A stretch of DNA of 64,000 nucleotides, taken from positions 248,001 to 312,000 of the IMG/VR virus record IMGVR_UViG_3300012931_000759; one strand, written 5' to 3'. Each line of letters begins with the position of its first letter. The first letter of the stretch is position 1. Below the pieces are notes generated by a model. That model was not told the DNA's origin. It saw only the letters and a program-made list of their open reading frames with translations, and did not search any database. Positions 23,401 through 43,709 of the stretch are shown here, piece by piece. The position numbers and the translations under genes were made by a program.

Positions 23401-24347
23401 TCGGAGACCCCATCTCGGCCCTCGTGGTTAGGATGCCGGTCAGGGCGCGATCGGTCGTTTCGGTAACGCTGCCGGATAGCGACACGAACTTCTTCACAGG
23501 AGGTTCACTGGGCGCGGATGGTGTGACTGTCAGGCTAGGGCAGAGGATTCCGGTACAGAGCCAGCCCACGGTCACATATATCCCGATCACCAGCCAAGGG
23601 GATCGCTTCAGCGTCTTTAAGGATGACAACGGGATGCTGGTCCTGTCCGTTACGGCCTCCGGAGTCGACTACCAGATCTCTGCGCCTGTCTACTGGAAAA
23701 AGAACACCTGGCATCGCGTGTGGATCGGATGGAGCCTGAACAACCCAGACAACCAGGACCGCCTGGTGCTTATGGTGGATGGGGCCGAGCGTGGCGTCAT
23801 CAGGTACGGAACCGGCCTCAGATACGGCCTAGCCGGACGGTACGGTATGCCGACCGTCTGGGGACAAGCTCGCGCGGGAACGATTGCCTCGAGGAACATC
23901 CTGGCGGACATCAACATGACGGACTTCTTCAGCACCGTACAGATCGGTAACGACTTCTCCGGCCAGTCGCCCGCCATGGCTAGGATGGACAACCTGCGGT
24001 TCTCTAGCCAGATGAGGTCGATCCTCTACCTAGGCGGACGCGGGCCCGGCCAACTGATAGGGAACGACCTCCTGTACACAAGCAACGTGAACACGGCCCA
24101 GCCCGTGATCGAGGACGCATTGACTACGTTGCTTCTGGATTTCGACACGGATAGCAGCCTGGTCGAGTACCTTATTGCGGTACACGACAGCGCTGCAGGC
24201 ATTTTCGATTTCTTCGTTACCGTCATCGACTCATTCAAACTGATCCCGAACCAGGACGTCAGGGACCTGATTAAGAAGCTGATCAACAGGTTGAAGCCGG
24301 CGCACACCAGAGCGTTTGTGGACTTCGGGGACACGGAAGATTGTTAA
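17439..24347 (+). CDS. Giant baseplate wedge protein (gp7/P2 gpI-like) with N-terminal Ig-like and two LamG-like domains
   Basis: 2302 aa. C-terminal LINRLKPAHT motif of wedge proteins; LKGPTIPAIQALV wedge core; LamG-like strands GTIEFWVSP, WHRVWIGW, LMVDG, MDNLRFS. Contains 8 DGY. Confidence 0.75.
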   Translation: MTNLRAKQLMVRSSTTIEVTFTASLDPNIAPSNITIDGVGGTPSDLAVKSVSVSGAKLTVTVKPMISGALYEMVLASTSTQFFVGAHGERLVEDGATNHLFFTGIEEESDVFQALRDSLPPIYDPKGGSLLRDLIMPIAREIEAAQHAANEIGAANYISVEVTDEGITRGSGPYDRFANEGVFKILRVGATATSVGTSKTITYTSFPSDPISLQQDVVAEETVSNASGSLNSFDGLLISLSNGPVINVSSIVLVRGTSQYVYDITLFRYGLEESKYDSANAYSAFDIKNNQVRLSTAAVGPSFPLPQGNDIIKIGYTYKRLGRIPSVSSVSITTTVNVVRESVPAVATSFFLGHAPIVNRTGDTVTTGGIQWINPAANFDPTLKHPAFVTEIPFSESSLPSKAGEFAVNYSTGQVIVFGVDGSGTDGTTVVPPVATYWFKRTFQDGLDYNLFSDLWEIAAVPGRDLEGSPATISFTYEETFAEGTDFLFASHVEQIDERVNNRLIGDFGLTTEYGPVNEVFRIFNETTGELYRVSRISGNQVFFQATTPPRLVQMAREAASFNEHIQAQIVVSEEVAIPSKSFVAFRVELQDANIATATADYIGASFNSSLLFSDTSTFAREMYFDPEDTEGNNLQRLQQVGDYMVNYANGVAHVAVLSGSSTDIGDASYRFGEILTANKHITEVSNLYRSASAKAENVKIFTIGAIVDETVEIVDLEQVGESSVDGNAIQVSSGTVEVSQDAMRVRHIFQVTDLRTASAPVDFVAGAVISSSQPTTITLDPDGVPVTDSGANGVGLEVQTDGFRKYIEVSRLSNIVSGPTQLATLVDKVADPDFLAREYWVIDMATGQNYFALGNDSYIDASANRIYLPSNVPDSAIGTLVEAQYRAALLDGAAVLVDYTPGDIFIDYTYVADEILVSYEYGDNVLDWSVSDNLSAGQTYYVSYRYGALRDALRDNFGVLTGIEELATAPLSLERELYRAGLAGSLQSFLKGPTIPAIQALVKAFTAINPTIEESVFFEWLVGRDYLNLLPMTLTTAPDSSEDAMFAPGKFGYGLLLDSAGQTAKLPATSNMRFADGTWECQLTPLWMGVDNDAALTLDLLFDGYRMPSKVFIGAGGYSPDAIPFTIDRSDSRVLGRPLALHSENGYFIWYDSTAKKWRLRTRGPIDEQRLFEGQITSSGQFGEVTVASSADGYLPADGYGLDETNDYVRSTDDLLEFSFSVDGYDLLNLPLDAYGDGYYAAFDGVDFQSDNVRYLFDTGVESARNRMSLYKDGRGFLRYRVYDSNGRMKMLSANIRDWEAGATHPVAVAWKLGTVEQRDEMHLFVDGREVPNTYRFTGYLPVPATGGVKYMDSVGETLVSGVPVPTVGGSDMITVIGSDTVYSASATFGSDGVGIGDPFVILDSTTDGANTRMSPYVFVAEIVDENRLRLEIGPAGSGIPYLMISSLTGVRYSINRLTLATVADPLIEKVRVYTVSPTGEAMELRSPNALNPDYSFDRDGYQDYILLDNGLPIGWDIVLYSYGLTQQRSRQFAYVWPYRRTNLLKTIMPQPTAVSKIRITNIISRRANIEAGAFALVATIVGGHPVQMLASNLPFCQPSESIHGRRLAATIMGDNFDFGGFNQVTITGDTFDGYGGETLAFTNVGTLETTRYFLSITSVSAAFTPLDLSRSAGTIEIREALPLTQQENGGDYAQVRLSTLDQYGLDGTLSVGANTFSDGYARFGVEDINRLIYIEGAPPSWPSHVFTITDVQLDPSGTVKDSDTVVVSGQMPPVGTYTGLRWSERNLSFADSGFANGLITLEIVGSGGLPFLLSNCWYLVDFPSYAIIPLETVPETLYVGSDMFGANQAGAVIDEMHSLAEMLTDTGAGEVLPSSGRSVTSEAESVRELTPITQSLALFHFNGCLKNRASFYSSFSRSFFQSSNSVNSLFGQSGVFNGQGALSMDNAGIFFNNAGTIEFWVSPILDTYNDPTRRYYIDLSAEQTVVGDPISALVVRMPVRARSVVSVTLPDSDTNFFTGGSLGADGVTVRLGQRIPVQSQPTVTYIPITSQGDRFSVFKDDNGMLVLSVTASGVDYQISAPVYWKKNTWHRVWIGWSLNNPDNQDRLVLMVDGAERGVIRYGTGLRYGLAGRYGMPTVWGQARAGTIASRNILADINMTDFFSTVQIGNDFSGQSPAMARMDNLRFSSQMRSILYLGGRGPGQLIGNDLLYTSNVNTAQPVIEDALTTLLLDFDTDSSLVEYLIAVHDSAAGIFDFFVTVIDSFKLIPNQDVRDLIKKLINRLKPAHTRAFVDFGDTEDC

Positions 24348-24673: not shown

Positions 24674-24745
24674 GATGTTAAAATCCATCGGACTGCCTCC
24701 TTTGAAGTGTCTGGCTTACCGGTGGAAAATCGATGGAGGGCTGTC

Positions 24746-27574
24746 ATGAGTACAACACGTCTGCCTGTGGATTTAAAAAGGGTGGCATATTACGACGGGC
24801 AGCAGCTCACGCGCGATGACCTGCGCGACGAGCAGAACCGGCACGTCGGCATCGACGCGGCCACGGTCGCTAACTTCCTCGGAAGCGGGGTAGTGAGCGA
24901 CTCGGCAATTCCGCAGGTCCTTCTGGACACGGCGGAACTGAATCCCCAGCAGCAGGCGTTGCTCGACGCTTACTCGTTCGATGGGCAGAATGTCTACATC
25001 GGAACCGGACTGAAGCAGGTGTCGGATCCCGTGAATGGCGTGCTGCTAGCAGTCACGCTAACTGGCGTGGATCTCGTCGGCTCGATGGCGACCAAGGTAG
25101 CCATTATTGGCGAAACTTTCGGCGGGGGCCTTGTACACGACGAGCTTGTGTTCGAGGAGAATGGCACACAAGTTACGCGGGGGCGGTACAAAGAGGTGTT
25201 TGGCATCCTCCTCAATGACTTCGCAGGCAATCTATTCGGAAGTCTCTCCCCGGCAACCATCTATGTCGGCGGATATCAACTCGTGGGACGCTGTGTCGTC
25301 AGAGAGGCGGAGGCCTTGGAGGTCTCCATGGACACCCTGATAGCTTCGCAAACGGCTCAACCCAACCAGTTCTTCGGGAATTTCAAGCTCGGCAGCCCGT
25401 CATACACGCTGACTTCGTTATTCCAGGAGATCATTGGACCCTCGCATTCGCCCTCCGACCTTGGCATTAGTATTGCCTCGGTCGCCCAGCGGCAGATCGA
25501 CCCGGACGACGTGACAACCAGGATAGGGCAGAAGTTCCTGGCCACAGGGACGAACATCCAAAAGATCTCGATACTCGCGTCAGTGCTAAGGGACGAAAGC
25601 ACCCTGCCGGGAAACGAATACAATTGGTCGGGCCAGATCGTACTCAATCTCCTGGCGCTCCAGACGACAGTCGATTGTCCGGTGAAGCCGGTGCCCGATA
25701 ACCTCGAGGATTTCGATCCGGATCCCACAGTGGTAGCCCAGCTGTCGCTGGATGCGACGGATCTCGTGCGGCAAGGTGTCGTGCTGGATGGTTACGCTAG
25801 AAAAATCGATTTCGTGCTGACAGAGACCTCGATCGCCGATCCGCTGATTTCCCCCATTGAGCAGGGGCGTCACTATGTGTTCACCATCGGGCGCGCAGGC
25901 AATGCCAACGTCGGCACCCTGCTGTTCGAGGAAGCGGTCCACTCCACCCTGAATGGCTACATGGTAATCTACGACGGTACCCAATGGGTCAACATCTATG
26001 AGAGCGACATGTGGTTCGAGGTCTACGGCGATTATGTGAAGATCGCCGACGGCATCGCCTATCAGGAGGGCGTCGGTGTGGAGATCCCACGCTTGGCAGA
26101 GGATGCCAGCGGCGTCGAGTCCCCGAACTACGTGGGCCTGGTTCCATTCGCAACCACTGCCAAGGACGCCAAGAACTTCGTCCTCATGGAGGTGGAGACA
26201 ACCTACAGCGACACGCAGCAGGATCCACGAACGGGCAATCCGGTGTCCTCCAGGCTAGCGCCCTCCGCAGCCGTATCCATGGTTAAAGAGACGGATTTCC
26301 AGACGCAGCTTGCGGCGGACTTGGTGCCGCTCGCGCTGGCGCGTGCCACGGACGAGAACCCGAGGGGAAATCCCGTGTCCATATTGGGCACAACTACATT
26401 GGCTGGTGCTGTGTATGGCAACCACATACATGTTATCGCGCCGAACGCCGATCTGCTGTCGAACAACATCGTTGGCTCCATGTTGCTGCCGGACTCTGCC
26501 GAGAACAAGGAGTACCGCATTGTCTCTGTGTTGCTTAGCATGGACGCCTACGGCGATGTGGACGGTGACGGCGAGATCACATTCGCCGACCTTGCCATCG
26601 TGAACACTTGGCTACCCGACGGCTACGACCTCTCGGACCCCGTAGACCAGCAAAAGCTGATCGACGGCAAAGTCCCCCTGGACCGCGTCCTGCGGGCCGA
26701 CGTAAACGGGGACGGGAAAGTGGATATCACTGACGCGACGCTCATCCAGGCCTTCCTGGACAAGAGCATTTCGACGTTCCCGGCCGGTTCCTCTTTCCAG
26801 CGTATACTTATCAGGGTGGAGAACAAGTTGAATCCGCTGGCGGCCCAGGCCGACATGGCGGCGGACAACCCAGATTTCACCACTGTTCCGTTCGTCTCGA
26901 TTCCGTGGACGGTTGGCTACTTTAGGACATGGCTGCCTGACCGGATTGACCTGTGTGACATGCGTCGGTTGGTGCCGACCACGTTCACCGCTTTGCCAGA
27001 TGGCGATACCTGCTACGGTGGCCGGAACGACTTCTTTATTCCCGGTAACCAGCTATTGGACGGCTATGTTATGGACAAGTTCGGCGACCCGCATCGGCTC
27101 GACTTCGAGGTTGCCCATCTGTCCCTGAGGATCCCTGTGACCGACACGCTGGGTAACCCTACAATCCTCGACGGCTATGTGGGATTCCTACTATTCGACT
27201 CCTTCGTGGCCGAATCCTCGCTCGGCAAAACTTCGGCAGGTTTCCAGGCCATGAAGTACAGTGACCGGAGTTTCGTCCAGATCGGCGATTTCGGGGCCGG
27301 GCGTGTGCGCATCACAGCCTCACTACAGTCGCTAGCGAACGCCTGGCCGTCCCCGTTTGGTGGGAATGTGGACGACCTGGTCGGAATGTACTACGACCCA
27401 ACCACTTCGCTCCTGGTGCTACAAACCAGGAACCTGCTGAACGACGGCTATGGCAACCTACTGCCGTCCCAATGTATGCGGATCCTGGTAACTGTCTACC
27501 TGAAGAAGGCAGGATTCGCGAATACGACGCAAGATGTGACGGATGGCCAGATGCGCACCCTGTTGGGTATTTGA
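24746..27574 (+). CDS. Tail fibre / baseplate-attached protein with a dockerin-like domain
   Basis: Start moved to ATG 24746 (SD GGAGG). N-terminal RVAYYDGQQLTRDDLRDEQ is typical of baseplate-attached fibre proteins of contractile systems. Paired GDVDGDGEITFADL / ADVNGDGKVDITDA repeats. Contains 5 DGY. Confidence 0.7.
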   Translation: MSTTRLPVDLKRVAYYDGQQLTRDDLRDEQNRHVGIDAATVANFLGSGVVSDSAIPQVLLDTAELNPQQQALLDAYSFDGQNVYIGTGLKQVSDPVNGVLLAVTLTGVDLVGSMATKVAIIGETFGGGLVHDELVFEENGTQVTRGRYKEVFGILLNDFAGNLFGSLSPATIYVGGYQLVGRCVVREAEALEVSMDTLIASQTAQPNQFFGNFKLGSPSYTLTSLFQEIIGPSHSPSDLGISIASVAQRQIDPDDVTTRIGQKFLATGTNIQKISILASVLRDESTLPGNEYNWSGQIVLNLLALQTTVDCPVKPVPDNLEDFDPDPTVVAQLSLDATDLVRQGVVLDGYARKIDFVLTETSIADPLISPIEQGRHYVFTIGRAGNANVGTLLFEEAVHSTLNGYMVIYDGTQWVNIYESDMWFEVYGDYVKIADGIAYQEGVGVEIPRLAEDASGVESPNYVGLVPFATTAKDAKNFVLMEVETTYSDTQQDPRTGNPVSSRLAPSAAVSMVKETDFQTQLAADLVPLALARATDENPRGNPVSILGTTTLAGAVYGNHIHVIAPNADLLSNNIVGSMLLPDSAENKEYRIVSVLLSMDAYGDVDGDGEITFADLAIVNTWLPDGYDLSDPVDQQKLIDGKVPLDRVLRADVNGDGKVDITDATLIQAFLDKSISTFPAGSSFQRILIRVENKLNPLAAQADMAADNPDFTTVPFVSIPWTVGYFRTWLPDRIDLCDMRRLVPTTFTALPDGDTCYGGRNDFFIPGNQLLDGYVMDKFGDPHRLDFEVAHLSLRIPVTDTLGNPTILDGYVGFLLFDSFVAESSLGKTSAGFQAMKYSDRSFVQIGDFGAGRVRITASLQSLANAWPSPFGGNVDDLVGMYYDPTTSLLVLQTRNLLNDGYGNLLPSQCMRILVTVYLKKAGFANTTQDVTDGQMRTLLGI

Positions 27575-29969: not shown

Positions 29970-30038
29970 GCGCATGGACGCGATGGCTATGCTGATGGGA
30001 TTTCATTGACGGTGCTTGCCGCCATGTACAATTGCGAT

Positions 30039-30201
30039 GCGGTTGCGGAGCAACCGTGGATCGAAATTTAAATGACGCGCGGAGAATTTATCTCCGTGCC
30101 TTGATGGCTATATCTGTTCCTGCGGATAGCAGGAATACAACCGTCTATCAGCTTTGCTCAACTATGGATAAATCCAGATAGGCGGAAAGGTAGCAGAAAG
30201 C
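30039..30201 (+). ncRNA. Putative structured RNA leader upstream of the glycan operon
   Basis: Four consecutive 7-9 bp stems plus a nested 4-bp stem in about 150 nt of non-coding DNA (see findings); no known family recognised. Confidence 0.4.
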
Positions 30202-30203
30202 AA

Positions 30204-32474
30204 ATGAAAGTAAGATGGCACACAATGGCCGGCACCAACCATTCGTGGGCGTTTGTAGCCCAGGCCTTGGCACGGGCGATGAAACAGAGTGGTCATTCTG
30301 TGTTCATCAAATCGACAAACGGTCTAGAGCATTTTCCCGAAGACCTGAAGCCTCTTCTTCTGCCGGGCTATCACAGCCACCCCTCGTTACCAGAGGTTGC
30401 CTTCCTTGGCGAAAAGGGCATCACCAACTCCTTGTCTGATATTCCCAGTTGTGACATAAGAGAGTCTCCAGACCAGAACAGGCCATACGACCTGGAACTC
30501 GCCTACACCATCCTCTACCAGATACCGCGTCGGTTCTATGCCGAATCGGCATGTAGAATGGTTATTTGGAACTTCGAGAGTTCAATCATGCCCCCTGGAT
30601 GGCAGATGTATCATCGCGGCGTGGATTACATCCTACCATCCAGCCAGTACTCCTCAGATATTTTCCTCCAGAATGGTGTACCGGCCTCGAAACTTGTAGT
30701 TGTGCCGCATGGCGTGTACCGTGAGATGTTCCACCCCGGCATTCCGCCGTTCAAACTTCACACACAGAAGCGGATCAAGTTCCTACACAACGCAATCCCA
30801 CACCACCGCAAGCTCCATGAACGCGTCATCGGGGCGTATCTTGACGCATTCACCGGGGACGACGACGTGTGCCTGGTGCTGAAGACCAAGTTCCTCCAGC
30901 CTTCCAAGGACAAGCCCTTCGAGGTCGACGTGCGCGAAATCCTGGAACGGAAACTGAAAGGCTGCCCGAATCCGCCCGAGATCGAGGTGATCACATCCTT
31001 CGTCCCCGATATCGGATCGCTCTACACTGCCTGCGATGCGGTCGTCAGTATGAGCTCGTGTGAGGGCTATTGTCTTCCTTTGCTTGAGGCCTTGGCTTGC
31101 GGAAGTGTAGTTATCGCGCCCCGGCATGGCGGCCAACTTGATTTCCTGGATGACAGGAATGCGCTACTCGTGGACACTGGCGAGATGAAGGCTCCCTTGA
31201 GTATGCAGTACTGGACGCATGCCCCGGAGGCCGTCGTGGGCGACCCTAGCGAGAGGCATTGCGCCGAACTCATGCGGCGCGTATACGCCGATCCGGCGGG
31301 GGAAAAGGCGCGCGTCGCCGAGGCAGCTCGCGTGACAACCGAGCGGTTCACGTGGGAGGCGGCAGCCAAACAGATCGTCGACCTGGCCGAGACTCGCATG
31401 ACCGAAAAGGCAATTTCTCCGTCGCCCCGCAAGAGAAGCGTCCTGTACGTGGTGCCCTACGACATGGCCGGTGGCGGCGAAATGTGGGTACGCGAGACCA
31501 TCAAACGCCTCGACAAGAGCCGGTACGAGCCGAGCGTTGTGTTTCCGCTGGGAGCGAGGCCCGAGCTGGTCGCCCTGTTCAGCGACCTCGGGGTGCCATG
31601 CGACGACCTGAGGAACCAAGGGACAGGCAATGCGCTGAAGTGTATGATCGAGTCCGGCAAACCTGACATCGTCCATTTCTACAACAGCCTACAGGTCTAC
31701 AGCCTCCTTATGCGCACGATCCAGGAGGGTGCGTGGGGAGGCAAGCTGGTCGAGACCGTACACAGCGAACTGATGTGGCCGGACTCGATGATGAAGGTCG
31801 CCGCACGACGCGGCGTCTCCATGATCGTCGGCGTCTCCGAGACCATCTGCGCGCGACTTGCGCGCCTCGGCAATCCGAATGTCAGGCACCTTCCGCAGCA
31901 GGTCGCATGGGACCGCTTCTCCGTCCCGAGGGGCAAGGAGGTTCTCGGAGAGATGGGGTTACCCACCGACAGGTTTACTGTGGGTACGGTGGCGCGCCTC
32001 TCGCCCGAGAAGAACATCCCGATGGTCCTGGCCTGCGCCAGGGCGATGCCCGACGCGCTGTTCGTGGTCGTGGGTGAGGGCCCGCAGGCCACAGTCCTGA
32101 ATGGAATGGCTTCCGGCCTCGCAAACGTGGTGTTCGCCGGACGGCGATCCGACGTCGAACGGTTCTATGCCGCCTTCGACGTCCTGCTTCTACCATCCAC
32201 CATGGAGGGTCTGCCGCTCACGATACTCGAGGCGATGGCGGCCGGGACACCGGTCGTTGCCTCCAAGGTCGGTGCCATTCCCGAGGTGGTGTCCGACGGA
32301 ACGAACGGTTTCCTGGCCTCCAAGGCGCAGGAGTACGTGGCGGCCTTGGAGAAGCTGCGCGACCCGGCATCCAGGGATAGCATGGGCAAAAATGCCATGG
32401 CGCTGGCTGACATCCTGAGAATGCGCGGCAACACCCAGAACATTAATACATTGTACGACTCGCTATTCAGGTAA
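30204..32474 (+). CDS. Double GT4-type (GT-B) glycosyltransferase
   Basis: Two GT-B units: SSCEGYCLPLLEALACG and PSTMEGLPLTILEAMAAGTPVVAS, each with the EX7E motif. Confidence 0.9.
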   Translation: MKVRWHTMAGTNHSWAFVAQALARAMKQSGHSVFIKSTNGLEHFPEDLKPLLLPGYHSHPSLPEVAFLGEKGITNSLSDIPSCDIRESPDQNRPYDLELAYTILYQIPRRFYAESACRMVIWNFESSIMPPGWQMYHRGVDYILPSSQYSSDIFLQNGVPASKLVVVPHGVYREMFHPGIPPFKLHTQKRIKFLHNAIPHHRKLHERVIGAYLDAFTGDDDVCLVLKTKFLQPSKDKPFEVDVREILERKLKGCPNPPEIEVITSFVPDIGSLYTACDAVVSMSSCEGYCLPLLEALACGSVVIAPRHGGQLDFLDDRNALLVDTGEMKAPLSMQYWTHAPEAVVGDPSERHCAELMRRVYADPAGEKARVAEAARVTTERFTWEAAAKQIVDLAETRMTEKAISPSPRKRSVLYVVPYDMAGGGEMWVRETIKRLDKSRYEPSVVFPLGARPELVALFSDLGVPCDDLRNQGTGNALKCMIESGKPDIVHFYNSLQVYSLLMRTIQEGAWGGKLVETVHSELMWPDSMMKVAARRGVSMIVGVSETICARLARLGNPNVRHLPQQVAWDRFSVPRGKEVLGEMGLPTDRFTVGTVARLSPEKNIPMVLACARAMPDALFVVVGEGPQATVLNGMASGLANVVFAGRRSDVERFYAAFDVLLLPSTMEGLPLTILEAMAAGTPVVASKVGAIPEVVSDGTNGFLASKAQEYVAALEKLRDPASRDSMGKNAMALADILRMRGNTQNINTLYDSLFR

Positions 32475-32488
32475 GGTGGCGCAGGGAC

Positions 32489-35400
32489 ATGGATGAGATT
32501 AACCCTAAGTTGTGGGACGGCGACTTCGGGGAATTGCGCGAAGGTGAGGGCGAGGGCCGTCAAGGTTGCCGCTTGGAGGGGTCGAGCGCTTCCGCGAACG
32601 TGCCACTTATCGGCATTGAGCCCTGGTCGGTGTACCGCTTCCAAGTAACCTTAAGGAACGCGGGTGGAAGCGGTCGGCTGTGCTTTAATCTGCGCGTCAA
32701 TGGCCAGGATTTTCCGCCCGCCATGCTCGACTGTCCAGCCGACCCGCTTTGGCGCGTGTTCGAGGTCGATGTGGCGACAGCCCGGTGCGTCAAGGGTACA
32801 CCGGGCATCTTTAGGATCCATCGTCTTCCCGTGGATTCGGGAACGATGCTCGTAGGGCGTATCGCCGCAGAAAAGTTGCCGCATGGCGTCGGGCCCACAC
32901 CTGAACCTAGGTTAGTGGCCACGGAAGGCAACATCGGCATCTGTGCGCCCGTCGCAAAATACGCTGTGTTGATGGAGGAAGGTATGGATGAGTTCGACCA
33001 GCAATTTTGGCGCGGTAAGAACCTTGTCGCCAAGAAGGACGATCGGGGCGCAAAATGTCTCTCCATGGAAGGCGACAGATCCATCATATTCGTGCCCGTC
33101 AAGGTAGAGCCGAACTCGGTGTACAGGTGCCAACTCGACCTAAGGCGCGAGACCGGGAATGGCAAAATCTACTGTAACCTCTACGCCAACCGAAGTTTTG
33201 ATTTCCCACACATCTCCCTCGCGTGCGAGCTGGGCAGCTGGGGAACCTACGACATCCAGGTCAGGACCGGGACTTTTCCGCCCAACCTCCCCATTGTGCT
33301 GAGGTTGTGGCGGTCGCCTGCGGGAACCGGATCCCTGCTCGTGAAGCGCATAGCGCTCGAGAAGCTGCCGCCGGACGCGCCTGCCGAGGAGCCGAAACTG
33401 GTGGTGTCCTCGTCTGTCGAACGGCTTATGGTGGTCCTTCCGCCGACGGTGGAAAAGACGATCCCTGCGCCCAAGGGGATACGCGTGCCGCGCGCAAACA
33501 AGCCGCCCCCGATCGAAGTACTTCCACACCGCAAAAGAGTGCCCGACCTGCCCAACAGGCTGTCCTACTCGCGTTTTGAGCGGGAACCCACAAAAGTCCT
33601 CGTTGTGTCAGAGATGGGGGACGAGACGGCTATGCGGGAGGCCTTCGAGGCCATAGGTATCTCATGCGAGGGCGCAGCCATGGCCGGAAATGTATCGCGG
33701 TTCCCCGACATGGCGCAGAGCGCCGCCGCGAACTGGATCCACTTTCACATCCGCAGAGGAACACTCTTAACTCCGGAGATTGTCGATGGGATCAGAAACG
33801 CCAGGCCGGGCATCGCAGTCACTATGTGGGCGCAACCCGGATGGCCGCTTTTCGACGCGGCATTGCTCCGGGTTCTCCGCGCCGCCGATCTTGCGCTGGT
33901 TGGTGGTGACATCGAGCTAGCCACCTGGCGCGCTGCTGGATGCTTTAACGTCGAACTGTGGGATCCGGGTGCTACAAACTTGTCCCCTTCCGGCGAGGAT
34001 TCTGGATACGATGTGGTAGCGGTGTCAGACGATCCGTCCGATCCACATTCAGATCTTGCTGCGGCGCTGGCCGGGAAGTTTGGCGCGCGTGCCGTCTTCG
34101 CGCCTAGGGAGGATGTTGGCAGGCGTGTTGCCCTGGGCGGAGTCGGTGTAGCAGTGTTCGCAGACCAATGGCCATCACGCAGCCTGTTCGGCCTCATGGC
34201 CACCGGAATCCCAGTGGTTGCTAGGCGGTCCCTTGGCACCATGGAGTGGTGTCGGAACGGAATCGACCTTCGCCTTTTCGACACCCCTGAGGAATGCGTA
34301 GCTATCGTTTCCCAGCTGCTAGACTGTCCCGAGGTCGCGCAGACTATTGGCGCGGAAGGGGCAGCCCTGGCTGCCACCCATTCGCGGATCGCACGCGCCA
34401 AGGAGCTAGCCACACGGCTCGGGTGCTTTGAGACAACCATGACCTGCTTTCCCAAGGACCGGACATCCTACACGTTCGGACATGTGCTCTGTGCCATGAA
34501 AGCGGCACCCCCGGAGCTGATGGGCCGCAGTGGCAACGGGGAGGTGGATGTTTCAACCGCTTCGTTCGCCGAATGCCGCGATCTTGAAGCCAAGATCATC
34601 AGATCCAACCCGGATCTATTACATATCCATCTGGAGGACGAGGACGACGGTCTGCCTTGGCGCGACCTGCTGATAGATCTCCGCAGGCGCATGCCGCATA
34701 TGCTGGTTACAGTGTGGCATCATGGTGGCCAGGGGGTCGACAGGAGGATGATGGATCTGCGTTTCCTGGTTGACCACATGTTTGTCGGGGATACAGAATC
34801 GCTGGCACGCTACCGCGCGGAGTCTATCGTAGGCGTCGCGGAATGGAGTGCCGGGGTAGCCCCTTCGGAAAATCCTATAGCTTTCCGCGAGGCCTTGTAC
34901 ACCCTTGCCAAGAGTATGGGGACGAGAAGGGACACTTTCCTCAGGGGCGCAGACGGACAAATGGTTGACCTAACAGTGTTTATCGGCACCTGTAACCGGT
35001 ACGACCAGCTACGGAGAGCGGTCGAGACAGCGCTTGCCTCGGCAGGCAATCGAACAATAGAAATCATCGTGAACGATGCCGGATCCACCGATGGAACACA
35101 GGATTGGATGCGCAAGATGGCAGTCACCGACAAACGGATTGTTCCAATCTTCTCCGGTAAACGCACAAGTTTCACACAGGCCTTCAACGAGGCTCTACAG
35201 ATTACAAAAGGTAAGTACATCTGCTGGCTCAGCGACGATATAGTATCAGAGGGTCAGTCCCTATCCGACATGTGCTCAATTATGGACGAGATCGAACCCA
35301 TGGACATGGGCGGGTTCTGCGTACGCAACTCCTGGGGCTACGAGTACACAGTCAGGAAGGACACCGGATTCTATTTCCCGCCAGTTGGGTGTGTATACAC

Positions 35401-35938
35401 GGAAACCATGCGCAAACTCAACGGTTTCAACATGGACTATCCGTACTACTCCCAGGACACCGACCTCGCCATGAGGATGTTAAGGCTTGGCGGGAGGATC
35501 GTGGCTTGCGTAGGCTGCCGCCTCCTACACAACTGCCAGAACGACGAGCTGCGTCGGAGCAATTCGGCAAACCACACAAACGCGATGACGGATGTCAAGT
35601 ATAACCTCGCGGCCTGGCGGCCTGGGGAATACGCCAAACTTCCCTATCCCAGCGTGCTTTTGGTTCCGACCGGCGGCTGCGGGCCAGAGGATATCCTCCG
35701 GATGGCAAGGGCTATCAGGGCCCAGTATTCACATTCGCACATGTCCGTAGGCGGCGAAGCCTCGGAACGTCTGGATACGCGCGGATCGAACTCCTTCCTG
35801 CGTAAAATCCCGACAGCCAATTGTCGGACGCCCTTCCTGTTCGACCTTGTGGTCGAGGTTGTGCCGGGCGGCGGCAATCTTGTGCGCCCATCCGACAGGT
35901 TAGATATACCTTTTGTGCGCAAACTCTTACAGGGATAA
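32489..35938 (+). CDS. Multidomain glycosyltransferase: two tandem beta-sandwich repeats + CgeB-like GT-B region + GT2 domain
   Basis: Residues 1-131 and 166-294 are homologous repeats. The central region resembles the spore-maturation CgeB/Glyco_trans_1_2 type. C-terminal GT2: TVFIGTCNR..IIVNDAGSTDGT..ICWLSDD. Confidence 0.75.
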   Translation: MDEINPKLWDGDFGELREGEGEGRQGCRLEGSSASANVPLIGIEPWSVYRFQVTLRNAGGSGRLCFNLRVNGQDFPPAMLDCPADPLWRVFEVDVATARCVKGTPGIFRIHRLPVDSGTMLVGRIAAEKLPHGVGPTPEPRLVATEGNIGICAPVAKYAVLMEEGMDEFDQQFWRGKNLVAKKDDRGAKCLSMEGDRSIIFVPVKVEPNSVYRCQLDLRRETGNGKIYCNLYANRSFDFPHISLACELGSWGTYDIQVRTGTFPPNLPIVLRLWRSPAGTGSLLVKRIALEKLPPDAPAEEPKLVVSSSVERLMVVLPPTVEKTIPAPKGIRVPRANKPPPIEVLPHRKRVPDLPNRLSYSRFEREPTKVLVVSEMGDETAMREAFEAIGISCEGAAMAGNVSRFPDMAQSAAANWIHFHIRRGTLLTPEIVDGIRNARPGIAVTMWAQPGWPLFDAALLRVLRAADLALVGGDIELATWRAAGCFNVELWDPGATNLSPSGEDSGYDVVAVSDDPSDPHSDLAAALAGKFGARAVFAPREDVGRRVALGGVGVAVFADQWPSRSLFGLMATGIPVVARRSLGTMEWCRNGIDLRLFDTPEECVAIVSQLLDCPEVAQTIGAEGAALAATHSRIARAKELATRLGCFETTMTCFPKDRTSYTFGHVLCAMKAAPPELMGRSGNGEVDVSTASFAECRDLEAKIIRSNPDLLHIHLEDEDDGLPWRDLLIDLRRRMPHMLVTVWHHGGQGVDRRMMDLRFLVDHMFVGDTESLARYRAESIVGVAEWSAGVAPSENPIAFREALYTLAKSMGTRRDTFLRGADGQMVDLTVFIGTCNRYDQLRRAVETALASAGNRTIEIIVNDAGSTDGTQDWMRKMAVTDKRIVPIFSGKRTSFTQAFNEALQITKGKYICWLSDDIVSEGQSLSDMCSIMDEIEPMDMGGFCVRNSWGYEYTVRKDTGFYFPPVGCVYTETMRKLNGFNMDYPYYSQDTDLAMRMLRLGGRIVACVGCRLLHNCQNDELRRSNSANHTNAMTDVKYNLAAWRPGEYAKLPYPSVLLVPTGGCGPEDILRMARAIRAQYSHSHMSVGGEASERLDTRGSNSFLRKIPTANCRTPFLFDLVVEVVPGGGNLVRPSDRLDIPFVRKLLQG

Positions 35939-35940
35939 AT

Positions 35941-36780
35941 ATGGACTTCTGTACATACTTCGACTCCGCGTATCTGATCAAGGCCAAGGTGTGCCGACAT
36001 ACGCTGATATCTAGGACTCCAGTCAGACTTTTCGTGCTATGCCTCGACGACAAGGTGGCAGAGGTCGTGTCACATTGGCCGGAGACCGTGGCCATATCAC
36101 TGTCTGATATCGAAACCTACCGCCCTGCCCTCTTAGGGGTAAAGAGCCGGAGGCAGTCCAAGGAATATTACGCAACGATTACGCCAATCCTGCCACAGTT
36201 CATCTTCGACCAGTTTGGCGTCCGAACACTGTTCTACACGGATGCAGACATGGCCTTCTGGTCACCAGCCGAGGAGATCGCCGAGGTCATGGGCGACAGG
36301 TCCCTGCTAGTGACGCCGCACGAAAACCCGATTGCTGTGGCTGGAGGGGCCGGCTTTTTTAATGTGGGCATCCTTGGATACCGAAACGACCACAACTGTC
36401 GGGTATTCTTGGAATGGTGGGAAGCTAAGTGCCTGGAGTGGTGCGAGTGGCGCGCCCTGCCTGACGGAAGATGTGCTGATCAGGGATATTTATCGATTCT
36501 CCATGCTCAACCGGACTGCTTCGCGGGTGTGGTAACCAATCCTTCTCCCGGAATCAACCTTGGTCCATGGAATCTAGCCCTCCACGGCACGGAAAAGAGG
36601 GATAGCATGATCATACTGGATTGTCGACATAACCTAGTATGTTACCATTACCATGGATATAAGAATATGGGGGGCACATGTGTAAATGACACGGGGTGGG
36701 AAGTGTCCTCCTGGAATATGAATCACATCTACCTCCCATACCATGACCTAATCTTAAGGGCACAGGCGGGGACATTATAG
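35941..36780 (+). CDS. Putative GT-A glycosyltransferase
   Basis: Start ATG 35941 (MDFCTYFDSAY); FYTDADMAFW, FNVG, ADQGYL, GINLGPWN. Confidence 0.75.
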   Translation: MDFCTYFDSAYLIKAKVCRHTLISRTPVRLFVLCLDDKVAEVVSHWPETVAISLSDIETYRPALLGVKSRRQSKEYYATITPILPQFIFDQFGVRTLFYTDADMAFWSPAEEIAEVMGDRSLLVTPHENPIAVAGGAGFFNVGILGYRNDHNCRVFLEWWEAKCLEWCEWRALPDGRCADQGYLSILHAQPDCFAGVVTNPSPGINLGPWNLALHGTEKRDSMIILDCRHNLVCYHYHGYKNMGGTCVNDTGWEVSSWNMNHIYLPYHDLILRAQAGTL

Positions 36781-36782
36781 AC

Positions 36783-37637
36783 ATGGACTTCTGTACATAT
36801 TTCGACAGCGCATATGCGACAAAGGGATGGGTCTGCCACAGGACACTGATCGACCGCAGCCCAGGATCCCGATTGTTTGTGCTCGCCTTGGACGATAAGA
36901 CTCTGGCGCAGGCCGAGGATCTTGTGGGCAGGAGGATTGTGCCGGTCAGGCTGGCGGACATCGAATCATACTGCCCAGCGCTATTGGCTATAAAGGAAAC
37001 TAGGCAGCTCAAGGAGTACTACGCGACGATCTCTCCGGTGCTGCCCTTGTTCCTGTTCGACCGGTTCGGGATGGAGACCGTATTCTACACCGATGCGGAC
37101 ATGGCCTTCTGGTCGGAACCGGAGGAGATCGCGGACGTGATGGGCGATAGTTCACTGATGGTCACCGACCACGGGTTCGAGCCGCCTAGGACAGGAGTGC
37201 GCTTTAATGTGGGAATCCTCGGCTACAGGAACGACGCGTACTGCCGAGAGTTCCTGGAATGGTGGCGCGACCGCTGCCTGGAGTGGTGCGAGTGGCGAAC
37301 CCTTCCGGATGGGAGGTGTGCAGATCAAGGATATCTAAACATCCTCCACGACCAGCCCGGAAGGTTCAAGGGCGTGCTGTCGTGCCCACAGCCAGGCATC
37401 AACCTTGGGCCATGGGGGATAGGCAGGCATACGATTGCGGCCGAGAGCGGGCACCTGAGAATCGACGGCAGGCACAATCTGGTCTGCTACCACTACCACG
37501 AGTTCAGGATGACTGGACCAGACTCGTATTACCCGACTGGCTGGAAACACACGGCAAGCGACAGACGACTTGTGTATGAACCGTATTTCGCGCTGACTCG
37601 CCAAGCTATGTTCGGCACCATATGGAGCAGCAAATGA
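36783..37637 (+). CDS. Putative GT-A glycosyltransferase (tandem duplicate of 35941)
   Basis: MDFCTYFDSAY start and the same motifs, with obvious DNA-level similarity to the upstream gene. Confidence 0.75.
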   Translation: MDFCTYFDSAYATKGWVCHRTLIDRSPGSRLFVLALDDKTLAQAEDLVGRRIVPVRLADIESYCPALLAIKETRQLKEYYATISPVLPLFLFDRFGMETVFYTDADMAFWSEPEEIADVMGDSSLMVTDHGFEPPRTGVRFNVGILGYRNDAYCREFLEWWRDRCLEWCEWRTLPDGRCADQGYLNILHDQPGRFKGVLSCPQPGINLGPWGIGRHTIAAESGHLRIDGRHNLVCYHYHEFRMTGPDSYYPTGWKHTASDRRLVYEPYFALTRQAMFGTIWSSK

Positions 37638-38293
37638 GTAAAGAGAAAGATTATCTCTGGTGGACTCTGCCTGAAGTTGCCGTCGAGCACGATAACATGA
37701 ACCGGGCCTATTTCGAGAAGGGGGAAGCGGGCAAGTATCCGTATTTCGATATCCTACAGCAGGCAATGCGACTTGTTGACCAGCAGGATGCGAGAACGCA
37801 TCCGCTGGCGTGCCTGGATGTCGGATGCGGCGCCGGGTGGCAGGCCGTATACCTGGCCAGCCTTGGCCTGGATGGTAGGTTTTTCTATGAGGGGATGGAC
37901 ATCTCGCAGCACATGTGCGAACGGGCGAAGCGGAACTATCCAGCTGGGACCTTCCACACGGCCGACATCATGGAGTTCGAGCCAAAACGCCAATGGGATG
38001 TTGTGATGGCCTGCGGCTCCATCGAGCACTTCTCGGACTGGAGGGCGTTCCTCGGACGCCTGGCCGGACTGTCGTCCGAATGGATCATCGTCCACAAGGT
38101 GTTTTTCCAGGACGGGGCCGACAAACCCACGGAGAGGATCACCTGCCCGACATATGCCGGCAGGACGCAGACCAGGATGGTGATAGACTACAGCGAGTTT
38201 GCGTGCGCCCTTGATGCGCTTGGCTACGCGGTTGCGCACCGGTTCGACTGGGACATGAGGGCCGTGAGCTGCGTGGTAGCGAGGAGGAAGTAA
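37634..38293 (+). CDS. Class I SAM-dependent methyltransferase
   Basis: LDVGCGAGW motif I, EGMDIS, DVVMACGSIEHF; ATGA overlap with the upstream gene. Confidence 0.9.
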   Translation: MSKEKDYLWWTLPEVAVEHDNMNRAYFEKGEAGKYPYFDILQQAMRLVDQQDARTHPLACLDVGCGAGWQAVYLASLGLDGRFFYEGMDISQHMCERAKRNYPAGTFHTADIMEFEPKRQWDVVMACGSIEHFSDWRAFLGRLAGLSSEWIIVHKVFFQDGADKPTERITCPTYAGRTQTRMVIDYSEFACALDALGYAVAHRFDWDMRAVSCVVARRK

Positions 38294-42624: not shown

Positions 42625-43709
42625 ACGTTCCGTTCCTGAACCTGGACCGCGAGGCCCAGATGCTCATCGGCCTCGGCCTAATGGCCGACATCGAGGAGGT
42701 CATCCGGTCCGGGCGGTTCCTGTTCGGTCCGAAAGCCGCCGAACTCGAGATCCGGCTGTCCGAGATGTTCGGGCGGGAGGTAGTGCTGGTGGGCAGTGGC
42801 ACGGACGCCTTGGCCCTTTCCCTGAAGGCTGTCGGCGTGGGTCCGGGCGATCTGGTGGCCGTGCCGGCTATCTCCGCCATCCCCACGGCTGTCGCCATTC
42901 ATATGGTCGGGGCCGAGCCGCTCTACATCGACGTGGATGGCGGATTCACCATGGATCCGCGCAAGCTGGAGAAGATGGCGAACCACCCGCGCCTGAAAGC
43001 CGTCGTTCCGGTCCACCTGTACGGGAATCCCGCCGACATCGGCAGGATCCGTGTAATCTGCTGTGCCAACCGCCTGATCCTGGTCGAAGATTGCGCCCAG
43101 AGCCTTGGGGCCTACAGCCATGATCTGCCCTTGGGGACGCTGGGTTCGGCCGGAGCGTTGAGTTTCTACCCGACCAAGAACCTCGGCTGCATGGGTGACG
43201 GCGGCGCGGTGGTCGCGTGCGACGCCAACATGGCCAAGGCGATCCGGGAGCTGCGCTTCTACGGCCAGGAGACGAGCCACAAAATGGGGCGCTTCATCGG
43301 CATGAACAGCCGCATGGATGAGATCCAGTGCGCCATCCTGCTGAGGAAGCTCCAGCTTCTGCTGGCCCAGTTCGGCCGCAGGCGGGAGATGAAGGTAATG
43401 TACGACGCCGCCATGGCTGAGACCCGGTTCTGGACACCGGCATGGCGCGAGGGGGCGATGCCCCACCTGTACCCGATCATGGCCGAGGATCGCGCGAAAA
43501 CGATCGCGGCCTTGGCCGAGAGGGGCGTCGGGACGGCGATCCACTACCCGTTCCACCTGATGGAGGCCGTGGAGGGGGCGCCCGGCGCGGGCGAGCTTTC
43601 GCAGGCCAAGATGTACGTGGGCAAGGTGATCTCGCTGCCATTCAACCCATGGATGACGGACGACGAGATAAAGCATGTCCTACAGTCGGTCAAGGAGGTG
43701 GGGGAGTGA
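42621..43709 (+). CDS. DegT/DnrJ/EryC1/StrS PLP sugar aminotransferase (FdtB/QdtB-like)
   Basis: GSGTDAL, PVHLYGNPAD, EDCAQSLG, SFYPTKNLGCMGDGG (catalytic Lys), NSRMDEIQ. Confidence 0.92.
   Translation: MNVPFLNLDREAQMLIGLGLMADIEEVIRSGRFLFGPKAAELEIRLSEMFGREVVLVGSGTDALALSLKAVGVGPGDLVAVPAISAIPTAVAIHMVGAEPLYIDVDGGFTMDPRKLEKMANHPRLKAVVPVHLYGNPADIGRIRVICCANRLILVEDCAQSLGAYSHDLPLGTLGSAGALSFYPTKNLGCMGDGGAVVACDANMAKAIRELRFYGQETSHKMGRFIGMNSRMDEIQCAILLRKLQLLLAQFGRRREMKVMYDAAMAETRFWTPAWREGAMPHLYPIMAEDRAKTIAALAERGVGTAIHYPFHLMEAVEGAPGAGELSQAKMYVGKVISLPFNPWMTDDEIKHVLQSVKEVGE

What the first reader, a model, noticed from the sequence alone, without database searches (positions are those of the whole stretch)
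32489..33370. Tandem beta-sandwich repeats on a GT, the second with its own strong ribosome-binding site
Seen in sequence: residues 1-131 and 166-294 align (VEP(W/N)SVYR.Q..LR..G.G....NL..N..DF ... G..LV.RIA.EKLP). Both begin ATGGATGAG (MDE), and the second ATG (32984) follows GGAGGAAGG. Inference: duplication of a gene start giving two isoforms with two or one repeat. The repeats resemble carbohydrate-binding or substrate-recognition modules, and could be the module that reads a protein sequon or growing glycan for the fused CgeB-like and GT2 domains.
Basis: partly seen in the sequence, partly recalled or inferred. Interest (0 to 1): 0.6.

Follow-up and report, generated by a model that had tools for sequence, protein, structure and literature searches.

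The report
Duplicated sugar-binding-like module with internal start
A large glycosyltransferase of an uncultured 340-kb phage starts with two copies of a sugar-binding-like module, and the second copy has kept its own ribosome-binding site and start codon, so the gene probably makes a long and a short enzyme; both features are known kinds of thing, and the two products have not been shown.

Summary
Residues 1-165 and 166-330 of the 1149-aa product of window 32489-35938 are a true tandem repeat (34% identity, E 3e-23). Both copies start ATGGATGAG, and GGAGG lies 5 nt before the second ATG at 32984.

AlphaFold2 folds each repeat as a jelly-roll beta-sandwish-type domain (beta-sandwich), joined by disordered linkers. 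The best structural matches are CBM35, CBM36, CBM6, CBM22 and CBM4 modules (Z 12-13). No Pfam family matches.

In about 48 related protein clusters the module is single and sits at residue 1 of a glycosyltransferase. Repeat 1 arose once. It evolves about twice as fast as repeat 2 and has lost six signature residues. It is missing from close relatives (P0012, P0013), whose genes start exactly at the codon matching M166.

In eight two-repeat relatives (gene GC 31-68%) the internal start codon is kept (ATG seven times, GTG once). A GGAG(G) motif is kept 5-11 nt upstream inside a variable linker. The Glu codon that carries it is GAG in 8 of 8, against a 0.0012 expectation from codon usage.

A sugar-binding role is inferred from the fold only. 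The DGY-sequon idea has no support. This is a new member of known kinds.

The parts
30204..32474 (+). Upstream two-lobed GT4 glycosyltransferase gene (756 aa). It is the conserved left neighbour in every relative.
   Evidence: Pfam Glycos_transf_1 and Glyco_transf_4; PHROG glycosyltransferase; synteny in L002, L004, L015-L019.
32473..32479 (+). Shine-Dalgarno-like AAGGTGG of the first start. It overlaps the GT4 stop codon and lies 9 nt before the ATG.
   Evidence: Sequence; duplex energy -8.6 to -9.1 kcal/mol.
32489..35938 (+). Whole gene, 1149 aa: CBM-like repeat 1, linker, CBM-like repeat 2, Pro-rich linker, CgeB-like GT-B region, GT2, C-terminal alpha/beta domain.
   Evidence: Full-length AF2 model has pLDDT 81.8 with disordered stretches at 132-137, 148-166 and 308-350.
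32489..32893 (+). Repeat 1 (residues 1-135): the fast-evolving, optional copy of the CBM-like jelly-roll.
   Evidence: AF2 pLDDT about 85-93. VIA matches: CBM35 2vzp Z 12.8, rmsd 2.4 A over 115 residues; CBM36 1ux7 Z 12.2. Repeat-1 copies form one clade, 100/100. Mean pairwise identity 37%. dN/dS about 0.17 against L015. Has lost N230, N234, D238, F263, P264 and W274 equivalents.
32894..32983 (+). Inter-repeat linker (residues 136-165). It holds a short strand (141-145), then a disordered stretch of variable length and sequence.
   Evidence: pLDDT below 50 for residues 149-164; mean pairwise identity 30%.
32974..32978 (+). Internal Shine-Dalgarno core GGAGG (within GGAGGAAGG, 32974-32982), 5 nt before the internal ATG.
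   Evidence: Duplex energy -9.3 kcal/mol. GGAG(G) is conserved 5-11 nt upstream of the start codon in 8 of 8 two-repeat loci (full GGAGG in 7). The Glu codon is always GAG despite GAG shares of 16-81%.
32984..32986 (+). Internal in-frame ATG (M166), the candidate start of a 984-aa short isoform.
   Evidence: Met in 11 of 12 two-repeat proteins and GTG-encoded Val in the twelfth. It is the actual start codon of the single-repeat orthologues P0012, P0013, L010, L012 and L013.
32984..33388 (+). Repeat 2 (residues 166-300): the canonical, strongly conserved CBM-like module with signatures N-[FL]-Y-A-N-R-[SN]-F-D-F-P and R-L-W-R-x-P-G-G-T-G-S-L-L-V.
   Evidence: AF2 pLDDT 91-96. VIA matches: 5awo Z 12.9; CBM36 7ay3 Z 12.4, rmsd 2.5 A over 118 residues; CBM6 1uxz Z 11.9. 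Mean pairwise identity 68%. Family signature from 48 clusters.
33389..33538 (+). Strand 303-307 followed by a Pro-rich disordered linker (about 308-350) to the catalytic body.
   Evidence: pLDDT below 50 for residues 308-350.
34172..34408 (+). Core of the CgeB-like GT-B region (Glyco_trans_1_2, residues 562-640).
   Evidence: Pfam 26.7 bits against a cut-off of 25. The same region scores 76-168 bits in relatives P0019, P0026, P0031 and P0033. Foldseek matches to the GT-B enzymes PglA, MshA and GlgM.
34973..35332 (+). GT2 (GT-A) catalytic domain (residues 829-948) with invariant S915-D916-D917.
   Evidence: Pfam 60.9 bits; invariant columns; Foldseek matches to K4CP 2z86, PmHS2 8vh7 and TarP 6h21.

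Best explanation
The gene encodes a large two-catalytic-domain glycosyltransferase (a CgeB-like GT-B region plus GT2) of a 340-kb uncultured phage. It sits in a glycan-synthesis island next to the tail and baseplate genes. Its N-terminus carries a family-specific beta-jelly-roll module of the carbohydrate-binding-module (CBM) type, tethered by disordered linkers. In most of the family this module is single and starts at residue 1.

In one ancestor, a tandem duplication of the gene's 5' end copied the ribosome-binding site, the ATG and about 150-165 codons. This placed a second module in front of the first, in frame. The inner copy (repeat 2) kept the family signature. The outer copy (repeat 1) is still under purifying selection but evolves about twice as fast and has lost six signature residues. 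It behaves as an optional cassette that was lost, or swapped out, at least twice.

The duplicated ribosome-binding site and start codon inside the gene are kept by selection. The gene therefore most likely yields two products: a 1149-aa enzyme with two modules and a 984-aa enzyme identical in layout to the ancestral one-module enzyme.

The modules most likely hold the enzyme on its glycan acceptor or product. Repeat 1 would add or change binding.

Shown: the repeat, the fold, the family architecture, the single origin and repeated absence of repeat 1, and the conservation of the internal site. Inferred: that ribosomes start at 32984, that the ligand is a glycan, and what the glycan is attached to.
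For: Repeat: E 3e-23.

Fold: AF2 pLDDT is about 90 for both repeats with a disordered linker. VIA Z is 12-13 at rmsd 2.3-3.0 A over 113-131 residues to CBM35, CBM36, CBM6, CBM22 and CBM4 modules. Atlas shape hits carry CBM_6 and F5_F8_type_C. Language-model neighbours are CBM_4_9 clusters. Distant profile hits overlap sub-threshold CBM_4_9 matches.

Family: a profile search of 1.84 billion representatives gave 121 hits. About 48 clusters have the module, nearly always single, at residue 1 and fused to Glyco_trans_1_2 and/or GT2.

Single-repeat orthologues start at the codon aligned with M166, 14 nt after the GT4 stop. They were seen on independent contigs.

Repeat-1 copies form one clade at 100/100. 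On the catalytic body, single-repeat P0013 is sister to two-repeat P0007 at 100/100, and monophyly of the two-repeat proteins is rejected at AU p 1.4e-47.

Repeat 1 has 37% mean pairwise identity and repeat 2 has 68%. For the window against L015, dN/dS is 0.29/1.73 for repeat 1 and 0.069/0.97 for repeat 2.

Internal site: GGAG(G) lies 5-11 nt before the ATG or GTG in 8 of 8 loci. Its energy is -9.3 to -11.2 kcal/mol in six of the seven loci scored by one method (L019: -6.6), placing it in the top 0.2-6% of positions in each gene. The Glu codon in it is GAG in 8 of 8 although GC runs from 31 to 68% and synonymous sites are saturated; the product of the GAG shares is 0.0012.
Against: The Met at the start of repeat 2 could be kept for structural reasons. 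It is part of the first strand of the domain and is the retained initiator in single-module proteins.

The conserved M-E residues that carry GGAGG could be under protein-level selection.

One orthologue (L019) has only GGAG, at -6.6 kcal/mol.

mRNA around the internal start is only weakly less structured than the gene average (mean percentile 0.26).

No CBM family HMM matches the module, so sugar binding rests on the fold and the context alone.

The AU test group was named after a first tree had been seen.
Confidence: 0.55

Rival explanations
1. The internal GGAGG and ATG are only relics of the duplication, or are kept for protein-level reasons. Only the 1149-aa two-module enzyme is made.
For: No direct evidence of initiation exists. 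Met166 lies in the first strand of the domain and could be structural. M-E is also how many single-module proteins begin (ME[EI]L), so the motif may echo protein sequence. The mRNA-structure test is inconclusive.
Against: The linker around the motif is otherwise poorly conserved (30% identity, variable length) and predicted to be disordered. The motif keeps a working distance of 5-11 nt although indels occurred between it and the ATG. The synonymous choice is GAG in 8 of 8, even in genes where GAG is 16-28% of Glu codons. The one non-ATG codon is GTG, which is also a start codon. Shine-Dalgarno-like sequences are reported to be depleted inside coding regions (title of PMC5100845).
Confidence: 0.3
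2. The internal Shine-Dalgarno-like site is kept as a translational pause site. It would give repeat 1 time to fold before repeat 2 emerges, and would not act as a start.
For: It lies exactly in the disordered inter-domain linker. It is conserved at nucleotide level.
Against: A pause site needs no start codon 5-11 nt downstream, yet ATG or GTG is kept in 12 of 12. No equivalent site was examined at the second linker (residues 308-350). From my own knowledge, pausing at such sites is itself disputed.
Confidence: 0.07
3. The true gene starts at 32984, and the upstream 495 nt are an untranslated or decaying extension.
For: Single-repeat relatives start at the homologous codon. A public gene call for this same gene also dropped part of repeat 1 (P0002 starts at M79). 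First-start Shine-Dalgarno sites are weak in some relatives (-3.6 to -6.2 kcal/mol in L017, L018 and L019).
Against: The frame is open through about 165 codons in all 12 two-repeat proteins, including a gene with 31% GC. dN/dS is about 0.17. Core residues are conserved (W9, P39, Y49, G60, G62, F75, W88, R109, R112, G118). AF2 gives a confident fold. The intergenic spacing to GT4 is the same 14 nt as in single-repeat relatives.
Confidence: 0.03
4. The jelly-roll modules are not glycan binders. They would instead be protein-protein modules that dock the enzyme on a virion protein substrate (for example the DGY-rich neighbouring proteins) or drive oligomerisation.
For: The same fold decorates phage structural proteins: HFTV1 tail and turret at Z 10.7-10.8 and the phi812 baseplate at Z 10.6. 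The island adjoins tail and baseplate genes. DGY is enriched in two neighbouring large proteins.
Against: The top structural and language-model neighbours are overwhelmingly CBMs of carbohydrate-active enzymes. The conserved signature is rich in aromatic and Asn, Asp and Arg residues, as in sugar sites. No interaction was tested.
Confidence: 0.2

Closest known systems
Tandem CBM22-1/CBM22-2 of Paenibacillus barcinonensis Xyn10C (PDB 4xup), and single CBM35, CBM36, CBM6 and CBM4 modules (2vzp, 7ay3, 1ux7, 1uxz, 1gui)
   Same: Two consecutive beta-jelly-roll modules at the N-terminus of a carbohydrate-active enzyme, joined by flexible linkers. VIA Z is 13.0 for the tandem and 12-13 for single modules, at rmsd 2.3-3.0 A.
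   Different: Sequence identity is only 5-16%, and no CBM HMM matches. The modules here are attached to a glycosyltransferase, not a glycoside hydrolase. No binding has been demonstrated. Calcium or ligand residues could not be mapped.
Glycosyltransferases with a non-catalytic lectin domain: polypeptide GalNAc-transferases (PMC4432651), MGAT4A/B (PMC11635297) and the B4GALNT3 PA14 domain (PMC13018970)
   Same: A sugar-binding module tethered to a transferase, steering it to acceptors that are already glycosylated or to its own product. This is the working model proposed here.
   Different: Those are eukaryotic Golgi enzymes with C-terminal ricin-type, CBM-like or PA14 domains. The module here is N-terminal, of another fold family and duplicated, and its function is untested.
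Two-polypeptide phage endolysins encoded by one gene through an in-frame internal start (PMC9430671). From my own knowledge also T7 gp4A/4B, lambda C/Nu3 and bacterial ClpB 93/79.
   Same: An in-frame internal start codon with its own ribosome-binding site at a domain boundary, giving a full-length and an N-terminally shortened product that share a stop codon.
   Different: In endolysins the short product is the binding domain alone, and the two products were shown experimentally. Here the short product would be the complete ancestral enzyme minus one binding module, the site arose by duplication of the gene's own start, and no product has been observed.
Bifunctional polysaccharide polymerases K4CP (2z86) and PmHS2 (8vh7)
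   Same: Two glycosyltransferase domains in one chain. These are among the top Foldseek matches of the catalytic body.
   Different: TM-scores are low (0.15-0.18 by query). The enzyme here combines a GT-B-like region with a GT-A domain rather than two GT-A domains. Polymerase activity is not shown.

Membership tests
Carbohydrate-binding modules of the galactose-binding-domain-like clan (CBM_4_9, CBM6, CBM35, CBM36, CBM22) | Beta-jelly-roll sandwich fold of about 120-140 residues | tested here: met
   AF2 pLDDT is about 90 for both repeats. VIA Z is 12-13 at rmsd 2.3-3.0 A over 113-131 residues. Atlas shape hits carry CBM_6.
Carbohydrate-binding modules of the galactose-binding-domain-like clan (CBM_4_9, CBM6, CBM35, CBM36, CBM22) | Significant sequence match to a curated family model | tested here: not met
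   No Pfam hit, even at E 10, for 15 members. No PDB sequence hit below E 0.1. There is only a transitive link: distant profile hits (E about 1e-6) overlap CBM_4_9 matches that fall below the cut-off.
Carbohydrate-binding modules of the galactose-binding-domain-like clan (CBM_4_9, CBM6, CBM35, CBM36, CBM22) | Non-catalytic module appended to a carbohydrate-active enzyme through a flexible linker | tested here: met
   Disordered linkers at 148-166 and 308-350 precede the GT body. Glyco_trans_1_2 and GT2 lie downstream.
Carbohydrate-binding modules of the galactose-binding-domain-like clan (CBM_4_9, CBM6, CBM35, CBM36, CBM22) | Demonstrated binding of a carbohydrate | not testable with these tools
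   This needs purified repeats on glycan arrays, by calorimetry, or in co-crystals.
Genes with an in-frame internal translation start (two-polypeptide genes) | In-frame ATG, GTG or TTG preceded by a Shine-Dalgarno site at 5-13 nt | tested here: met
   GGAGG at 32974-32978 and ATG at 32984. Energy -9.3 kcal/mol, in the top 3.3% of positions.
Genes with an in-frame internal translation start (two-polypeptide genes) | Site conserved in orthologues beyond what the protein sequence requires | tested here: met
   GGAG(G) and a start codon are present in 8 of 8 loci inside a variable linker. The Glu codon is GAG in 8 of 8, against an expectation of 0.0012. Synonymous sites are saturated. Caveat: the loci are related and there are only eight.
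Genes with an in-frame internal translation start (two-polypeptide genes) | Two polypeptides actually produced | not testable with these tools
Reads could not show translation starts in any case.
GT2 (Pfam PF00535) | Match above the curated cut-off, with an acidic DxD-type motif | tested here: met
   60.9 bits against a cut-off of 23.3. S915-D916-D917 are invariant in 16 relatives.
CgeB-like Glyco_trans_1_2 (Pfam PF13524) | Match above the curated cut-off | tested here: met
   26.7 bits against a cut-off of 25, so marginal, in the window protein. Relatives score 76-168 bits.

The most novel reading that the evidence does not exclude
The duplicated start is a working switch. The phage would make a fixed ratio of a two-module and a one-module glycosyltransferase from one gene. 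The fast-evolving, repeatedly lost outer module would retarget part of the enzyme pool to a different acceptor, or the two isoforms would assemble into a mixed complex as some two-polypeptide endolysins do. This would diversify the glycan the phage builds. It would be a first case of a glycosyltransferase whose substrate-targeting modules are dosed by internal translation initiation, and it would define an unclassified CBM family specific to phage glycosyltransferases.
Probability: 0.25. Interest if true: 0.6.

Novelty: new member of a known kind. Interest (0 to 1): 0.42.

Why it matters
Phage-encoded glycan synthesis, whether on virions, DNA or the host surface, is poorly understood, and nearly nothing is known about how phage glycosyltransferases find their acceptors.

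This family has about 48 clusters and no Pfam model. Its invariable N-terminal CBM-like module offers a handle on that question. The isolated 135-residue module could be used to identify the glycan it binds.

The locus is also a clean natural example of how a tandem duplication of a gene's 5' end creates a nested gene with two starts. All the stages are present among relatives: one module, two modules with the start retained, and reversion.

Practically, it shows that automatic gene calls for this family are unreliable at the 5' end.

Tried and rejected
- Nucleotide search of 30000-38000 against 50,697 phage records found no match. tblastn of the protein found only two remote GT2 hits at 23% identity.
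- Pfam on 15 N-terminal regions at E up to 10 returned only noise. PHROGs found nothing for the protein. The PDB sequence profile search found nothing significant.
- The sigma-70 promoter and terminator scan of 31800-33600 found nothing on the + strand, so there is no sign of an internal transcript start. The phage may not use such promoters.
- The local mRNA-structure test around the internal start was inconclusive. The mean percentile was 0.26, and the first starts show no open structure either.
- I considered that the linker (K-Y-A-V-L-M-E-E-G) descends from the duplicated tail of the GT4 gene (L-Y-D-S-L-F-R-stop) plus its intergenic region. Only a conserved Tyr and a short AGG-AAGGT similarity support this, and the lengths differ by 11 nt. 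I dropped it as not demonstrable.
- I considered DNA hypermodification as the target of the island. The record, estimated 84% complete, has no Tet/JBP and no thymidylate-synthase-type hydroxymethylase, so the idea is unsupported but not excluded. The Tet/JBP search also failed to ring in the control genomes.
- I checked whether the phage belongs to the 'moraphage' lineage (PMC12619734). The record identifiers are not in that paper.
- DNA for four relatives (P0007, P0008, P0009, P0014) was not retrievable.
- No complex prediction was run, because the report claims no protein-protein binding.
Full report
**Setting**

The window is bases 248001-312000 of a 340,392-bp IMG/VR virus record, estimated 84% complete. 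Almost all long ORFs lie on the + strand.
- A Baseplate_J protein lies at 14174-17428, followed by very large proteins without family matches.
- From about 30.2 kb a glycan-synthesis island follows: a two-lobed GT4 (30204-32474), the gene in question (32489-35938), two unknown paralogues, a methyltransferase, a GT2, a GT47-like protein, a DegT aminotransferase, a 4,6-dehydratase/epimerase and a nucleotidyltransferase. GIY-YIG genes are interleaved among these.
- No close relative exists among 50,697 deposited phage genomes.

The ORF encodes 1149 residues. Residues 1-165 and 166-330 align at 34% identity, E 3e-23. Both copies start ATGGATGAG. GGAGGAAGG (32974-32982) puts a GGAGG core 5 nt before the second ATG at 32984.

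That site pairs with the anti-Shine-Dalgarno sequence at -9.3 kcal/mol. It is in the strongest 3.3% of codon positions in the gene. Thirty gene starts in the window have a median of -6.7, and all positions have a median of -3.1.

**What the repeat is**

An AlphaFold2 model of residues 1-340, built on 15 sequences, has mean pLDDT 82. Both repeats score about 90 and the linker at 149-164 scores below 50.

Each repeat is a beta-jelly-roll. An exhaustive structural search gives Z 12-13 at rmsd 2.3-3.0 A over 113-131 residues to CBM35 (2vzp), CBM36 (7ay3, 1ux7), CBM6 (1uxz), CBM22 (4xup, itself a tandem) and CBM4 modules. Foldseek and the ESM Atlas agree. Language-model neighbours are CBM_4_9 clusters.

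By sequence the module belongs to no curated family. There is no Pfam hit even at E 10 and no PDB sequence hit. Only distant profile hits overlap sub-threshold CBM_4_9 matches. I therefore call it CBM-like by fold and context, not a member of a named CBM family.

The full-length model (pLDDT 81.8) shows two beads on disordered strings (148-166 and 308-350) ahead of a compact catalytic body. The body resembles GT-B enzymes and two-domain polymerases such as K4CP and PmHS2.

**The family**

A profile of 25 module sequences, searched against 1.84 billion representative proteins, found 121 proteins, 47 of them below 1e-10. In about 48 clusters the module is recognisable over most of its length. 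It is then nearly always single, begins at residue 1-2 and is followed by Glyco_trans_1_2 and/or GT2 domains.

Twelve proteins, including the window's, have two copies. The family signature is W174, G176, P203, Y212, G223-N-G225, N230, N234, D238, F239, C246, W251, F263, P264, P268, R272, W274, R275 and G281. Repeat 2 keeps all of these. Repeat 1 keeps the core but has largely lost N230, N234, D238, F263, P264 and W274. These polar and aromatic positions are my candidates for the ligand site. That is an inference, because I had no coordinates to map them.

**History of the duplication**

- Repeat-1 copies form one clade with 100/100 support, so the duplication happened once in this group.
- Among the ten two-repeat proteins first found, repeat 1 averages 37% pairwise identity, the linker 30% and repeat 2 68%.
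- For the closest pair (window and L015), dN/dS is about 0.29/1.73 for repeat 1 and 0.069/0.97 for repeat 2. Repeat 1 is therefore translated and constrained, but evolves about four times faster at non-synonymous sites.
- Single-repeat genes are real. In L002 and L004 the GT4 gene ends 14 nt before a 982- or 981-aa gene whose first codon aligns with M166. Both proteins were seen on independent contigs. The same holds for L010, L012 and L013/L014.
- On the catalytic body, single-repeat P0013 is sister to two-repeat P0007 (100/100), and the quick tree places P0012 among two-repeat proteins.
- Holding the two-repeat proteins together costs 344 log-likelihood units, AU p 1.4e-47. The caveat is that the group was defined after a first tree had been seen.

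Repeat 1 has therefore been deleted, or exchanged by recombination between related phages, at least twice. Each time the result was a gene that uses the internal start as its only start.

**Is the internal start used?**

The comparative evidence favours use.
- All 12 two-repeat proteins have a start-capable codon at the homologous position: Met in 11 and GTG-encoded Val in one.
- In the eight loci with DNA, whose gene GC runs from 31 to 68%, a GGAG(G) motif lies 5-11 nt upstream, with full GGAGG in seven. The surrounding linker varies in length and sequence.
- Site energies are -9.3 to -11.2 kcal/mol in six of the seven loci scored by one method (L019: -6.6), the top 0.2-6% of positions in each gene. 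Several first starts are weaker, at -3.6 to -6.2.
- The Glu codon that supplies the motif is GAG in 8 of 8, even where GAG is only 16-28% of Glu codons. The product of the GAG shares is 0.0012, and synonymous sites are saturated.

Against this, the Met may be structural and M-E may be a protein-level motif. Eight related loci are few, and the mRNA-structure test was inconclusive. I put the two-isoform reading at roughly 0.55-0.6.

**Mechanism proposed**

By analogy with CBMs, and with the lectin domains of GalNAc-transferases, MGAT4 and B4GALNT3 (PMC4432651, PMC11635297, PMC13018970), the module would hold the enzyme on a glycan acceptor or on its own product. The second, divergent module would add avidity or a second specificity.

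Internal initiation, as in two-polypeptide phage endolysins (PMC9430671), would supply both versions from one gene.

What carries the glycan is open.
- The island adjoins tail genes.
- The genome shows no Tet/JBP or thymidylate-synthase-type enzyme that would point to DNA glycosylation. The Tet/JBP search did not ring in the controls either.
- DGY is enriched in two neighbouring giant proteins, but nothing ties it to this module.

**Verdict**

The isoform claim is plausible and testable. The sequon idea is unsupported.

Both components are known kinds: a CBM-like module on a carbohydrate-active enzyme, and an in-frame internal start. The module family is unclassified, and the way the nested start arose is unusually clear.

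Noticed in passing
window 30204-32474; L015:1-2985, L017:1-2992, L018:1-2950: The upstream GT4 gene is 756 aa in the window. In three relatives it is 1190-1203 aa, with faint Intein_splicing/LAGLIDADG_3 hits. These look like intein-bearing alleles of the same glycosyltransferase.
   Followed up: no
window 43442-44422 and 45273-46481: Two LEM-3-like GIY-YIG genes, the second with HTH domains, sit between the sugar-nucleotide genes (DegT, epimerase/dehydratase, nucleotidyltransferase). They are probably homing endonucleases. LAGLIDADG genes flank the cluster in relatives L004 and L016.
   Followed up: no
window 32723 (M79 of the gene): The public gene call for this same protein (P0002, 1071 aa) starts at Met79, inside repeat 1. 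This cuts a confidently folded, conserved domain, so the start is mis-called.
   Followed up: partly
window 17439-24347 and 24707-27574: The tripeptide DGY occurs 8 times in the 2302-aa protein (0.58 expected) and 5 times in the 955-aa protein (0.24 expected). The 955-aa protein also has a dockerin/EF-hand-like calcium-binding motif.
   Followed up: partly
L019:3001-7036: In one relative the orthologue is split into two adjacent genes. One encodes 686 aa (two repeats plus the CgeB-like part) and the other 657 aa (GT2 part), so the fusion of the two catalytic halves is not universal.
   Followed up: no
window 35821-36780 and 36783-37637: Two paralogous genes of about 280 aa, both starting M-[ND]-F-C-x-Y-F-D, have no Pfam or PHROG match. 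They follow the gene in the window and in nearly all relatives, so they are conserved unknown members of the island.
   Followed up: no
L016 (GC 31%), L006 (41%), L019 (45%), window (59%), L015 (68%): The same syntenic block (GT4, CBM-GT, unknown paralogues, methyltransferase) occurs in phages whose gene GC ranges from 31% to 68%. This implies hosts of very different base composition.
   Followed up: partly
L020:3001-5616 (P0044): A distant family member with a different catalytic part (GT2 plus Glyco_tranf_2_5) also has two N-terminal modules. Both begin M-G, and they are separated by a charged helical linker. This may be an independent duplication that also copied the start codon.
   Followed up: partly
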